The notes under the pieces: generated by a model
Databases searched by the model: none
Told to the model about the DNA's origin: nothing
What the model saw: the letters and a program-made list of their open reading frames with translations, nothing else
Position numbers and translations under genes: made by a program
Shown: in pieces, positions 38,435 to 42,324 of the stretch
Position numbering within the stretch: the stretch's first letter is position 1
How the letters are laid out: each line of letters begins with the position of its first letter
Source: Haplodiscus bocki
Lineage: Eukaryota
Reading direction: 5' to 3'
Assembly (NCBI GenBank): GCA_965655095.1
Contig: OZ296648.1
Coordinates: forward strand, 51,832,001-51,896,000
DNA: 64,000 bases

Positions 38435-38963
38435 GTTAGCCTCCCAAAAATATAAAGTTGCTTGATTGTATTTTTGCCAATTTGGATTTTTGCGGAATTT
38501 AAATTTCTTAGAAAGCCAAAAATTTTTCATTGTGTTATTGGATGTATTTTTCTACGGGTTGATTCATTTTTTAAGGAGAGATTTAGAAAAATTAAATAAA
38601 ACCTCTTTTTATTTTCCACCCGTTTTTCATATGCAAGAAAAATCATTCATTCAACATTGCTTTTTTAAATATGAAATTTGCCAATTGCATGCAACGATAT
38701 GTGAAGTAAAAAGTGCAGATCGTCAACTGAGCGGCAAATGCGCCAAAGACTTGGAAGAAAAAGAAACCGGAATTTTTTTGAGGAATTGGACCAAAAATTA
38801 ATGCATTGACTAGACTATAAATTCTACGTTTTTGGGAAATAATAGAAAATTTGCTGTAGAAGACATTGGCACAGGCAAAATTTCTTGACTACGCTTTTTA
38901 CTCGACCAAAACTGAAGATTTTTTGAAGAAAAATGAAAATATTTAAACCGGTAAGAAAAAGTT

Positions 38964-39038
38964 GGGGGTAAATCCAACCTCACCTCCTCGTGGTACCCCC
39001 TCGGGGACAGTGCTGCTAGCACTGTCTAACGAACGAGG
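38964..39038 (+). ncRNA. HDV-like self-cleaving ribozyme fold at the 5' end of the RTE element
   Basis: P1 GGGGGT(38964-69)/ACCCCC(38995-39000); P2 CCTC(38978-81)/GAGG(39035-38); P3 ACC/GGT closing L3 TCCTCGT(38985-91); P1.1 CC/GG(39003-04); P4 GACAGTGCT/AGCACTGTC; J4/2 CGAA with the catalytic C at 39030. Confidence 0.82.
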
Positions 39039-42000
39039 CTCTGGCTGTGGAAGGCAATAGCAAACCACCACAGTATCCTGCTAAGAAACCATGAAGTTCA
39101 ATATAGTAAATCAAGAAAACGACGTTAACGTAGCCCAAAGGGGAGACGCGTCCGGTATGGATTGCACTACCAGGCAGGGTGCACCAGATCGTCATCATGC
39201 TACTGCCAAGATGGAAAAGCAAAAGAAAAAGAAGAATGTGTTCAAAATCGCAACATGGAACGTGAGAACACTGTTACAGCATGGAAAGTTGGAAAACGTG
39301 AAAAAAGAAATGGATCGTTTGAAATTCGATATCTTCGGAATATCAGAAATGCGTTGGAAAGGAAGTGGACGTATTCAAACCGACGACCACACTGTCATTT
39401 TCTCCGGCTCAGAAAACAGAAGCGAGATGGGAGTTGGATTGATATTTAACAAAAAGTGGTCAAAGAAGTTGACCGGATTTTGGCCGATTTCTGAACGAGT
39501 CCTTCTGGCCAAATTATCGACCGCGCCAATGCCAATGATTATTGTCCAAGTGTATGCTCCGTCAGCAACATCAACAGATAGTGAGATCGAGGCATTTTAC
39601 GATGATGTCGAAACAGCCATTAACAAATGCAAATCCAGAGATATCACAATGGTCATTGGTGACTGGAATGCGAAAGTAGGCAATGAAGAATCCTGTAGTG
39701 CCGTGGGACCTTTCGGACTGGATGAAAGAAATGAAAGAGGTGACAGATTTATTGAATGGTGCGAGGATCACAAGATGGTCATCAGCAACACATGGTTCCA
39801 AAATCGAAAAAGTAGATTGTATACATGGCGAAGCCCTGGTGATCGTACAAGAAACCAAATTGATTATATATGTGTGAATGAAAGATGGAGAAATTCCATC
39901 CTGGACTGCAAAACGTACCCTGGGGCGGACATCGGAAGTGATCACAATCCAGTTGTTGCAAAGGTGAGAGTGATTTTGAAAAAGACAAAAGCAACTGAAT
40001 TGAGACGCAGGAGGGATTATCAGTCTATTGATCCGGCTACCAGTCATGAAATAGAACACTTTGGAAGACAGATATGGACACACGAAGATAGAGAAACGAA
40101 AGAAACCACATGGGAGAAATTCAAACGTGTTTGTCATCTAGTAGATGAAAAATTTGTGCCTGTACGTAAACAACACAAAAACGGGTGGATCACTGAAGAG
40201 ATCCTAGAATTGATGGAAAAACGAAGGAAAGTTAAATTTGACGACAGAAGATACAAAGAAACAGACTGCATCATCAAACGAAAATGTATGGAGGAAAAAA
40301 TGAAGTATTATGACGCGCAATGTAACGAAATTGAATTGACTGAAAAATATATGCCAAGAGATCACCATCAAAGAATACAACAAGTAACCGGTAAGAAATG
40401 GAAAAATCGAAAGGATTCGAACGTGTTAAAGGACAAAGAAGGAAACATCATGATTGAAAAAGATCAAATTATTGAACGATGGAGAGAATACATTGAAGAA
40501 CTGTATAGTGACGATGAACGACTGCAAGAAACGATAAAGTTCGAGGGCGAATTGACTGGTAATAAAATTGAAAAAGATGAAATAGTGAAAGCAATGAATA
40601 CAATGAAAACGGACAAAGCGATTGGAAATGATGAAATACCTGTCGAAACGATCAGAAATCTGGGCAACACTGGTTTAGATATGCTACAGAAAATGTTTAG
40701 CGAGGTATATGAAAGTGGAAAATGGGATATTGAGATGATGGAATCAACGTTTATACCGTTACCAAAGAAACCAAAAGCAATTGACTGTAGTAACTTCAGG
40801 GCTATTAGCATAATGAATCACTCGACGAAAATATTATTGCGAATCATTATAAATAGAATGAAAAATGCCATTCATGCAGAAGTCAATGAATGCCAGAACG
40901 GCTTCATGCCGGATAAAGGAACTCGAAACGCCGTGTATGTACTCAACCGGATCGCAGAAAGAAGTAAACAAGTACAGAAAAAGGTGTTCTGCTGCTTTAT
41001 TGATTACACAAAGGCGTTCGACCGAGTCCAACACAACATATTATTTGAGATTTTGAGTGATCTAGACGTTAACGACAAAGATATCCGACTAATGCACAAC
41101 CTTTATTTCGGACAAAAAGCGAATATCCGAGTCTGTAATACGAAGTCAGAAAATGTGGATATAAAGAAGGGAGTGAGACAAGGATGCGTTGCATCGCCAG
41201 ATCTGTTCTCTTTATATTCGGAGGTGATAAGGAGAGCAATAGACAGAGAAAATGGAGTCAACATCGGAGGCCATAATATAACCAATATCCGATTCGCAGA
41301 CGATACAGTTTTAACAGCAAATACAGCAGACGATCTACAGATTCTACTGGAAAAAACCAACGCGAAATGTAGAAAGTTTGGAATGGAGATAAATACGAAA
41401 AAACGGTCATCATGGTACTAAACGGAGATGGAAAAGTGAAAACAGAGATCAAACTAAATGGTGAAGTTCTTAAAGAAGTGGAAAAATTCAAATACCTGGG
41501 AAGCTGGATAACGACTAATGGAGGACACATGACTGATATTAAATGTCGAATTGCCGAAACGAAAATAGCTTTTGCGGACATGAAAAATATACTAGCTAAT
41601 CTTAAAATGCCGTTTGACTTGAGATACCGAATTTTGAATTGTTATGTCATGCCTATACTTCTGTACGGATGTGAAAATTGGATATTGAACCAACAACAAA
41701 TTAAAAGACTAGAAGCGACCGAAATGTGGTTTATACGGCGAATGCAAAAGATCAGCTGGAAAGAAAAGAAGACAAACGAACAGGTACTCAGAGAAACTAT
41801 CGGAAAACGAAAATTAATACAAAAAATTGTGCAGCGACAAGTGTCATTTTTTGGACACGTTATGAGAAAACGACAACTGGAAAACATCGTAACAACAGCA
41901 AAAATAAATGGAAAACGGAAGAGAGGAAAACCATCGATCCAGTATATGGATCAAATTAAAAAATGGACCCAGCAAGATTCCATCGAGAGCCTGATGTCGA

Positions 42001-42064
42001 AAACTTACGAACGGACTTTATTGGTTGCCCAAGTCCATTGACAAGGCACGCAAAGAAGAAGAAG
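38965..42064 (+). mobile_element. Full-length RTE-clade non-LTR retrotransposon
   Basis: Perfect 12-bp TSD AAGAAAAAGTTG at 38953-38964 and 42065-42076; short 5' UTR, single APE-RT ORF, very short 3' UTR and (AAG)n tail. Confidence 0.95.
39091..42041 (+). CDS. RTE APE endonuclease-reverse transcriptase polyprotein, split by one frameshift near 41400
   Basis: APE motifs TWNVRTL, GISEMRW, QVYAP, GDWNAKVG, QIDYI, GSDH; RT motifs FIDYTKAFD, GVRQGC, RFADD, FKYLGS; RTE-type C-terminus FFGHVMR..GKRKRG. One extra A in the A6 run restores INTKKTVIMVLNG and joins the 776-aa and 209-aa ORFs. Confidence 0.95.
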
Positions 42065-42324
42065 AAGAAAAAGTTGCTATATTGATGCAGAAAAATTAAC
42101 AAAAATGGGTGGCGGAAAACATCCTGGCGGTAGCCGAGCGTGTTGTCCTTTTCATTCTACCAGAATGATAATATGAACAGTTTTTCCGGTAATATCTTCG
42201 GTTCCAACCCAAAATACCCAAGCCCGAAAAACCCAAACCCAAAATACCCAAAGTTCAAAATACCCAAGGCCAAAATATCCAAAGTCCAAAACACCCATGG
42301 CCAAAAAACCAACTGTCCCAAAAT

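What the first reader, a model, noticed from the sequence alone, without database searches (positions are those of the whole stretch)
38953..39045. HDV-like ribozyme defining the exact 5' end of a young RTE LINE
Seen: all double-pseudoknot elements are present in order with canonical L3 (TCCTCGT) and J4/2 (CGAA), and P1 begins at the TSD junction. Known: HDV-like ribozymes process 5' ends of R2, L1Tc and some RTE elements. Notable: the first 1-2 nt of P1, which should pair with T39001/C39002, are absent and replaced by target-site TT, with the TSD's last G completing the G-run. Activity of each new copy may therefore depend on its insertion site.
Basis: partly seen in the sequence, partly recalled or inferred. 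Interest (0 to 1): 0.7.

Follow-up and report, generated by a model that had tools for sequence, protein, structure and literature searches.

The report
HDV-like ribozyme heading an RTE retrotransposon
The first ~76 bases of this 3.1-kb RTE-type jumping gene encode a hepatitis-delta-type self-cutting RNA whose predicted cut is the element's first base. This arrangement is already known, and this copy carries two private defects in the ribozyme.

Summary
Window 38964-39038 has every element of an HDV-like double pseudoknot, in the right order, at the 5' edge of an RTE-type LINE with a 9-12 bp target-site duplication.

The family shows where the 5' end lies. Of 76 distinct copies in this 1.5-Gb genome, 50 start with exactly six G before TAAATCC. 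That is the predicted cleavage site, with a G1·U wobble closing a 7-bp P1. No upstream extension is shared by the family.

A sister RTE family in the same genome (46-50% amino-acid identity) has a homologous 5' UTR. It carries compensatory changes in P1 and P2. Within this family, one P4 pair runs C-G, U·G, U-A.

- The window copy lacks one base (G1, replaced by flank T38963), not a built-in part of P1.
- C39002 is not a P1 partner. It is a private G-to-C change (1 of 76 copies) at the first P1.1 position.
- 63 of 76 copies carry at least six G, a complete P1 5' strand, so dependence on the insertion site is not a family property.

No Rfam model reaches its gathering score, cleavage is untested, and the RNA-read test was void. 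The scan had already noted the same device in two other RTE families of this genome. Verdict: a new member of a known kind.

The parts
38953..38964 (+). 5' copy of the target-site duplication (AAGAAAAAGTTG). The left part may overlap the element's (AAG)n tail and the last G is ambiguous with the element's G-run, so the true duplication is 9-12 bp.
   Evidence: Identical 12-mer at 42065-42076. Contigs of other copies diverge after 42065/42067 (table 7).
38963..38963 (+). Position of family nt 1 (G1, the nucleotide 3' of the predicted scissile bond). It is T in this copy, giving U·U instead of G·U with U39001.
   Evidence: 50 of 76 copies have six G before TAAATCC; this copy has five.
38964..38969 (+). 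P1 5' strand, nt 2-7 (GGGGGU).
   Evidence: Pairs with 38995-39000.
38970..38977 (+). J1/2 (AAAUCCAA). The AAA..CCAA motif is shared with families C and D.
38978..38981 (+). P2 5' strand (CCUC).
   Evidence: Pairs with 39035-39038. Family D has two compensatory changes here: CUCC/GGAG.
38982..38994 (+). P3 (ACC/GGU) enclosing L3 UCCUCGU. C38986 and C38987 form P1.1.
   Evidence: Identical to the Rfam drz-agam-1 consensus for P3/L3 and aligned the same way by all three HDV-type models.
38995..39001 (+). P1 3' strand (ACCCCCU). U39001 is the wobble partner of G1.
39002..39003 (+). P1.1 3' strand. The family has GG, this copy has CG. C39002 is a private substitution that breaks one of the two P1.1 pairs.
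   Evidence: 1 of 76 copies carries C here.
39006..39026 (+). P4 hairpin (GACAGUGCU GCU AGCACUGUC).
   Evidence: The pair at 39013/39019 occurs as C-G, U·G and U-A in 12, 10 and 15 distinct rows and is never unpaired.
39030..39034 (+). J4/2 CGAA plus one extra C. C39030 is the likely catalytic cytosine.
   Evidence: Family D has a single CCAA followed by the same extra C and then the P2 3' strand. The alternative C39026 (CUAA), which two Rfam models align, would leave 5 unpaired nt before P2.
39035..39038 (+). P2 3' strand (GAGG), the probable 3' end of the ribozyme.
39049..39068 (+). 5' UTR block (GAAGGCAATAGCAAACCAC region) conserved with family D. Its role is unknown.
   Evidence: 18 of 20 bases identical, while the ORFs are only ~48% identical in protein.
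39091..41421 (+). ORF, first part: AP-endonuclease domain and start of the reverse transcriptase.
   Evidence: Pfam Exo_endo_phos 9e-9, Exo_endo_phos_2 2e-9, RVT_1 2e-32.
41412..42041 (+). ORF, second part, in another frame (frameshift near 41412-41421). This is the C-terminal region of the RT protein.
   Evidence: It aligns to family D at 46% identity.
42053..42067 (+). (AAG)5 microsatellite 3' tail of the element.
   Evidence: Family D ends in a longer (GAA)n.
42065..42076 (+). 3' copy of the target-site duplication.

Best explanation
The element at 38964-~42067 is a copy of an abundant RTE-type non-LTR retrotransposon. It has a single APE+RT ORF, a (GAA)n tail and a 9-12 bp target-site duplication.

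The family's first ~76 nt encode an HDV-like (delta-like) self-cleaving ribozyme:
- P1 GGGGGGU/ACCCCCU, with a G1·U wobble at the cleavage site
- P2 CCUC/GAGG
- P3 ACC/GGU with L3 UCCUCGU
- P1.1 CC/GG
- a P4 hairpin
- J4/2 CGAA(C), with the catalytic C at family nt 68 (window 39030)

Inferred mechanism: the element is transcribed as part of a longer host or read-through transcript. The ribozyme cuts immediately 5' of G1 and releases an RNA whose first base is the element's first base. Full-length reverse transcription then regenerates the whole ribozyme in each new copy, independent of the flank.

The window copy is a slightly damaged product of that cycle. It lost G1 at integration, probably by joining at a G/C microhomology with the target ...GTTG. 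It also carries a private G-to-C change in P1.1 and a frameshift in the ORF. Its own ribozyme is therefore probably weak or dead.

Shown: the fold, the position of the family 5' end, and the covariation. Inferred: cleavage itself, co-transcription, and the effect of the two lesions.
For: - Fold. Searches show all helices paired. An intact copy scores HDV_ribozyme 34.5 bits (E 0.0025), HDV-F-prausnitzii 32.6 bits (E 0.00026) and drz-agam-1 20.6 bits, all starting at the six-G run. My structural descriptor matches intact copies. It gave 0 hits in 7.7 Mb of composition-matched random sequence and 1 hit in 3.8 Mb at 59% GC.
- 5' ends. Of 76 distinct copies, 50 have exactly six G. Five have seven, no more than a chance flanking G would give (about 11 expected at the genome's G frequency). 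Eight have 9-16 and three have five. No upstream sequence is common to the family.
- Covariation within the family. P4 pair 51/57 occurs as C-G, U·G and U-A and is never unpaired.
- Covariation with sister RTE family D, which is 46-50% aa identical across the ORF with the same tail and a homologous 5' UTR. There are two compensatory pairs in P1 and two in P2, and the same CNAA+C junction. Families B and D share a P4 with two compensatory pairs.
- Element type. APE+RVT_1. The nearest atlas clusters are arthropod APE-RT proteins, including one named 'Craniofacial development protein 2'.
- Literature. HDV-like ribozymes cleave at the 5' junction of RTE, R4 and L1 elements (PMC3774820). RTE and baggins elements carry them and lack their own promoters (PMC6765202). 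The cleavage site is the first nucleotide of P1 (PMC4908430).
Against: - No Rfam model reaches its gathering score: 26.4 bits for the window copy and 34.5 for an intact copy against 50; 32.6 against 44; 20.6 against 37.
- No cleavage assay and no RNA 5'-end data exist. Three RNA runs under the species label gave essentially no reads, so that test is void.
- P2 is only 4 bp. J4/2 has 2-3 extra nt after P4 and one extra C before P2.
- Nested MFE folding is unremarkable (z = -1.35), as expected for a pseudoknot, and gives no support.
- Within-family covariation amounts to a single pair, and the copies are related by descent.
- A fixed 5' end could also come from a transcription start at G1.
Confidence: 0.85

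Rival explanations
1. One reading: P1 is constitutively incomplete in the element. Each new copy must borrow one or two bases from its target site, so ribozyme activity depends on the insertion site.
For: In the window copy the base opposite U39001 is flank T, and the last G of the duplication could supply one P1 base. Two other copies with five G have flank A opposite that U. R2 elements of many species do build the P1 5' strand from 28S target sequence (PMC3774820).
Against: 63 of 76 copies have at least six G, and 50 have exactly six, whatever the preceding base (A 22, T 21, C 7). P1 is therefore element-encoded. C39002 is a private substitution in P1.1, not a P1 partner. RTE insertions are not site-specific, so no constant target sequence could supply P1.
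Confidence: 0.05
2. The uniform 5' end comes from an internal promoter that starts transcription at G1. The HDV-like fold would then serve only as a structured 5' UTR (translation or protein binding) and would not cleave.
For: Identical 5' ends are also what a fixed start site gives. HDV-like ribozymes of LINEs are proposed to aid translation initiation (PMC6765202). There are no RNA data here.
Against: Conservation and compensatory change preserve exactly the catalytic architecture in four LINE families of this genome: G1·U at the terminus, L3, P1.1, and CNRA with a C. RTE elements are described as lacking their own promoters.
Confidence: 0.07
3. Chance resemblance: a G-rich/C-rich hairpin region that happens to fit an HDV-like drawing.
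For: Every Rfam score is below its gathering threshold. The MFE z-score is weak.
Against: The descriptor's false-positive rate is about 0-0.3 per Mb, yet the match sits exactly on the first base of the repeat. There are 72 motif matches against 0 in the control. Covariation is seen with sister families.
Confidence: 0.02

Closest known systems
HDV-like (delta-like) ribozymes at the 5' ends of RTE, baggins, R4 and L1Tc non-LTR retrotransposons (Ruminski et al. 2011 JBC, as cited in PMC3774820 and PMC6765202; L1Tc: Sanchez-Luque et al. 2011)
   Same: A nested double pseudoknot sits at the very 5' end of the element. The predicted cleavage is at the element's first base, so no upstream sequence is needed. 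The element inserts without site specificity, and the ORF starts ~50 nt downstream of the ribozyme.
   Different: This is a new sequence family. P2 is short (4 bp). An extra C lies between the CNAA junction and P2, conserved in two sister RTE families. A CUAA/CGAA tandem follows P4. Activity is untested. I could not read the primary paper, so I made no direct sequence comparison with the published RTE ribozymes.
drz-Agam-1 (Anopheles gambiae HDV-like ribozyme, Rfam RF01787)
   Same: P3/L3 is identical (ACC-UCCUCGU-GGU), with an A-rich J1/2 followed by a C-rich P2 5' strand (alignment).
   Different: It scores only 20.6 bits against a gathering score of 37. P1, P2 and P4 differ in sequence, and P2 is much shorter here.
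R2 retrotransposon ribozymes (Eickbush & Eickbush 2010; PMC3774820)
   Same: [quoted passage not shown] 5' junction variation (deletions, untemplated additions) is made anew at each insertion and removed again by cleavage.
   Different: In many R2 lineages P1 is built with 28S target sequence and cleavage lies 9-36 nt upstream. Here P1 is wholly element-encoded and the element is not site-specific. R2 also has a different endonuclease and ORF architecture.
Genomic HDV ribozyme (Rfam RF00094)
   Same: G1·U wobble at the cleavage site, a 7-bp P1, a 3-bp P3, L3 UCCUCG, a 2-bp P1.1 of CC/GG, and J4/2 CGAA.
   Different: It scores 26-35 bits against a gathering score of 50. P2 and P4 are unrelated in sequence. 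The context is a LINE 5' UTR rather than a circular RNA replicon.

Membership tests
HDV-like (delta-like) self-cleaving ribozymes | Nested double pseudoknot with P1, P2, P3, P1.1 and P4 in canonical order and spacing | tested here: met
   All helices are fully paired in intact family copies. In the window copy, one P1 pair (U·U) and one P1.1 pair (C·C) are broken.
HDV-like (delta-like) self-cleaving ribozymes | Cleavage site at the first nucleotide of P1 (G1, usually in a G·U wobble), with no upstream sequence required | tested here: inconclusive
   Support is indirect. 50 of 76 copies begin exactly at G1, which pairs with U39. There is no direct cleavage or RNA-end data, because the RNA runs gave no reads. 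The window copy has T at this position.
HDV-like (delta-like) self-cleaving ribozymes | Catalytic cytosine at the start of J4/2 (C-N-R-A) leading into the P2 3' strand | tested here: met
   CGAA lies at 39030-39033. Sister family D has a single CCAA at the homologous place. Departures: 2-3 nt lie between P4 and the C, one extra C precedes P2, and two Rfam models align C39026 instead.
HDV-like (delta-like) self-cleaving ribozymes | Compensatory base changes that maintain the helices | tested here: met
   Within the family there is one P4 pair, C-G/U·G/U-A. A versus D gives two pairs in P1 and two in P2. B versus D gives two pairs in P4. The sample is small and the alignment was made by hand on structure.
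HDV-like (delta-like) self-cleaving ribozymes | Reaches the gathering score of an Rfam HDV-type model (RF00094, RF02682, RF01787) | tested here: not met
   Window copy: 26.4 against 50. Intact copy: 34.5 against 50, 32.6 against 44 and 20.6 against 37. These models omit the pseudoknot pairs and were built on other lineages.
HDV-like (delta-like) self-cleaving ribozymes | Self-scission in vitro, abolished by changing the catalytic C | not testable with these tools
   Needs a bench assay.
RTE clade of non-LTR retrotransposons | A single ORF with an N-terminal AP endonuclease and an RT, ~3.2 kb long, with very short UTRs | tested here: met
   Element length is ~3.1 kb. APE and RVT_1 lie in one reading series split by a frameshift. 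The 5' UTR is 127 nt and the 3' UTR ~25 nt.
RTE clade of non-LTR retrotransposons | A 3' end formed by a short tandem repeat rather than poly(A) | tested here: met
   An (AAG)5 tail in the window copy and a long (GAA)n in family D. RTE-generated microsatellites are cited in PMC6765202, ref. 123.
RTE clade of non-LTR retrotransposons | Phylogenetic placement of the RT within the RTE clade | not tested
   Support is indirect only: nearest atlas clusters are arthropod APE-RT proteins, one auto-named 'Craniofacial development protein 2'. I built no tree.

The most novel reading that the evidence does not exclude
Loss of one or a few 5' bases at integration removes G1 and so disables the ribozyme. 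Such copies would be dead on arrival even with an intact ORF, unless the flank happens to supply a G. 5'-end erosion would then act as a per-generation filter on which RTE copies can become sources. The G-run expansions (9-16 G in 8 copies) and the snap-back or duplicated junctions (at least 5 copies) would be the footprint of reverse transcriptase handling an uncapped, ribozyme-made 5'-OH end.
Probability: 0.15. Interest if true: 0.5.

Novelty: new member of a known kind. Interest (0 to 1): 0.25.

Why it matters
It adds a well-documented example of a known device in a large, apparently arthropod genome (taxon inferred only from the nearest protein clusters). The example has 76 mapped 5' junctions and sister-family covariation. 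At least four LINE families in this one genome use the same architecture.

Three practical points follow:
- Rfam gathering scores miss these ribozymes, whereas a structural descriptor combined with repeat-boundary evidence finds them.
- The exact element 5' end (six G) is useful for repeat annotation.
- The natural variants form a ready-made allelic series for testing the cleavage-site pair and P1.1: G1 lost with flank T or A, and the P1.1 G-to-C change.

None of this changes current understanding.

Tried and rejected
- RNA evidence. I laid three raw-read RNA runs listed under the species label on 38600-42100. They gave 0, 0 and 1 reads, so this is no test of expression or of RNA 5' ends.
- Diversity by region (ribozyme versus ORF) among 29 copies. 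I rejected it because the loci were selected by identity over the first 300 nt, which is ascertainment bias, and one rearranged copy (L019) inflated the values.
- Nested MFE folding with shuffles. It is uninformative (z = -1.35 and -1.52), and the MFE is a non-native alternative fold.
- Rfam RF00094 over the whole genome. Only 5 sub-threshold hits were scored out of 3654 candidates. It did reveal families B and C.
- C39026 (CUAA) as the catalytic site. Two Rfam models align it, but I rejected it in favour of C39030. Family D has only one CNRA, at the position homologous to CGAA, and CUAA would leave 5 unpaired nt before P2.
- The outer P2 extension (38974-75 with 39043-44). It is invariant within the family but not maintained in family D, so I did not count it as part of the ribozyme.
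- The primary papers (Ruminski 2011; Webb 2009; the Webb & Luptak review) are not held in the library. I used secondary citations instead.
- I did not use the large protein searches, because the protein family was not in doubt.
Full report
**What is at the coordinates**

Window 38953-39045 reads AAGAAAAAGTTG, then GGGGTAAATCCAACCTCACCTCCTCGTGGTACCCCCTCGGGGACAGTGCTGCTAGCACTGTCTAACGAACGAGGCTCTGGC.

Downstream there is an ORF at 39091-41421 with AP-endonuclease and RVT_1 domains. It continues in another frame at 41412-42041 and is followed ~25 nt later by an (AAG)5 tail. The same 12-mer, AAGAAAAAGTTG, recurs at 42065-42076.

This is therefore a ~3.1-kb single-ORF APE+RT element with a microsatellite tail and a 9-12 bp target-site duplication. 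That is the RTE layout. The nearest protein-atlas clusters are arthropod APE-RT proteins, one auto-named 'Craniofacial development protein 2'. I did not build a tree.

**The fold**

I number the family from the first of six G, so nt n equals window 38962+n. The parts are:

| Element | Family nt | Sequence |
|---|---|---|
| P1 | 1-7 / 33-39 | GGGGGGU / ACCCCCU, with G1·U39 |
| J1/2 | 8-15 | AAAUCCAA |
| P2 | 16-19 / 73-76 | CCUC / GAGG |
| P3 | 20-22 / 30-32 | ACC / GGU |
| L3 | 23-29 | UCCUCGU |
| P1.1 | C24, C25 / G40, G41 | CC / GG |
| P4 | 44-64 | hairpin |
| J4/2 | 68-71, then C72 | CGAA + C |

- The Rfam HDV model aligns the window copy end to end at 26.4 bits (E 1.7 over 10 kb and 4227 families).
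- An intact family copy scores 34.5 bits on HDV_ribozyme, 32.6 on HDV-F-prausnitzii and 20.6 on drz-agam-1, all in the same register from the six-G run.
- All of these are below the gathering scores. Those models also leave out the pseudoknot pairs.
- A structural descriptor I wrote (7-bp P1 starting with G, 3-bp P3, L3 with CC, GG after P1, P4, CNRA, P2 of at least 4 bp) matches intact copies.
- The same descriptor found 0 matches in 7.7 Mb of composition-matched random sequence and 1 in 3.8 Mb at 59% GC.
- The motif ACCTCCTCGTGGT-N6-TGG occurs 72 times in the genome and 0 times in the reversed control.

**Where the family begins**

The genome (1.5 Gb) holds many near-identical copies. I collected 76 distinct 5' junctions.

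| G-run before TAAATCC | Copies |
|---|---|
| exactly 6 | 50 |
| 7 | 5 |
| 9-16 | 8 |
| 5 | 3 (the window copy, L003, L024) |
| shorter or replaced | 10 |

- The five copies with seven G are no more than a chance flanking G would give; about 11 would be expected at the genome's G frequency.
- In the six-G copies the preceding base is A 22 times, T 21 times and C 7 times.
- No upstream sequence is shared by the family.
- The element RNA therefore starts at G1, which is exactly the predicted scissile position.
- DNA depth in a genomic run rises from ~40 in the flank to ~6800 at the 5' end and ~18,000-40,000 at the 3' end. This fits a family that is mostly 5'-truncated.

**The window copy itself**

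It differs from the family in two ribozyme positions.

- Nt 1 is flank T38963, giving U·U instead of G·U.
- Nt 40 is C39002 instead of G, giving C·C in P1.1. This substitution is seen in 1 of 76 copies.

Only U39001 is a P1 partner. C39002 sits at the first P1.1 position.

The missing G1, next to a target ending in ...GTTG, looks like ordinary joining at a microhomology (inference).

From established knowledge of HDV ribozymes, the cleavage-site pair and P1.1 both matter for activity. PMC3774820 also reports that P1 mismatches, a U-U among them, have been postulated to explain a lack of in vitro cleavage except at raised Mg2+. This copy is therefore probably impaired (inference).

It is 97.5-99.1% identical to other copies over 1.8 kb, and its ORF is split by a frameshift. 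I could not check C39002 against reads, because the only contig with unique flank ends at 38993.

**Covariation**

Within the family, only pair 51/57 of P4 varies on both sides. It appears as C-G, U·G and U-A in 12, 10 and 15 distinct rows and is never unpaired. This is one evolutionary path, not many events.

Stronger evidence comes from other LINE families of the same genome.

- Its ORF is 46-50% identical to this element's protein along the whole length. It ends in (GAA)n, and its 5' UTR aligns with this one.
- Between A and D, P1 changes G-C to U-A at pair 4 and U-A to C-G at pair 7.
- P2 changes from CCUC/GAGG to CUCC/GGAG, which is two compensatory pairs.
- P3, the P1.1 pairs (CC/GG) and most of L3 (UCCUCGU versus UCCACGC) are kept.
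- Both families have CNAA followed by one extra C and then the P2 3' strand.
- Families B (L097) and D share a P4 with two compensatory pairs.
- Family C (L100) heads another APE-first ORF, 29% identical in protein, and has the same architecture.
- The outer CC/GG extension of P2 is not kept in D, so I end the ribozyme at 39038.

**Mechanism**

Shown: the fold, the coincidence of its predicted cleavage site with the family's 5' end, and compensatory change.

Inferred from the literature on LINE ribozymes: the element is co-transcribed with upstream sequence, cuts itself free at G1, and regenerates the complete ribozyme on full-length reverse transcription. The structured, uncapped 5' UTR may also help translation of the ORF 46 nt further on (PMC3774820; PMC6765202; PMC4908430).

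Junction variation is made anew at each insertion, as described for Drosophila R2.

**What is known and what is new**

HDV-like ribozymes at the 5' ends of RTE, baggins, R4, R2 and L1Tc elements are published. Use of target sequence in P1 is known for site-specific R2 but is not what happens here.

The scan had already reported the same device for two other RTE families in this genome. I checked one of them myself.

This is a new member of a known kind. The family-level documentation and the natural lesions are useful, but they are not surprising.

**Limits**

- There is no cleavage assay.
- The RNA-read test was void.
- The primary RTE ribozyme paper was not available, so I made no direct comparison with the published RTE ribozymes.
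- I built no full-length consensus and propose no repair of the element. The bench tests I suggest use natural copies only.

Noticed in passing
Loci L002, L010, L011, L054, L077, L082, L091, L096 (5' junctions of other copies): Eight copies have the 5' G-run expanded to 9-16 G, more than a chance flanking G explains. This suggests untemplated addition or slippage by the reverse transcriptase at the homopolymeric RNA 5' end.
   Followed up: partly
L003, L006, L017, L027, L082 (also L053, L094), immediately upstream of G1: Some 5' junctions carry short inverted or direct duplicates of the element's own first 35 nt. L017 has the reverse complement of nt 18-35. L027 has a direct copy of nt 15-26. 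GGAGGTGAG precedes G1 in three copies. This looks like snap-back or template switching at the end of first-strand synthesis.
   Followed up: partly
window 39049-39068 and L103 ~184-203: A ~20-nt block just 3' of the ribozyme (GAAGGCAAT[A/G]GCAAACCAC) is 18/20 identical between RTE families A and D, although their proteins are only ~48% identical. It may be a second functional 5' UTR element (protein binding or translation).
   Followed up: no
L097 (G000:C604:35993-36060), L098-L101, L100:1503-1590: At least two further HDV-like candidates exist in the genome. Family B is a single copy on an unplaced contig with the same P3/L3 and no long ORF within 1.5 kb. Family C has several copies and sits directly upstream of an APE-containing ORF 29% identical to this element's.
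   Followed up: partly
window 42190-42310: Just downstream of the element lies a run of degenerate ~17-nt repeats (cccaaaataccc, caaaatac-type units). I did not examine it.
   Followed up: no
window 41398-41421: The element's ORF changes frame next to an A-run. A genomic run shows that copies of the family differ in length at this spot (table 4).
   Followed up: no
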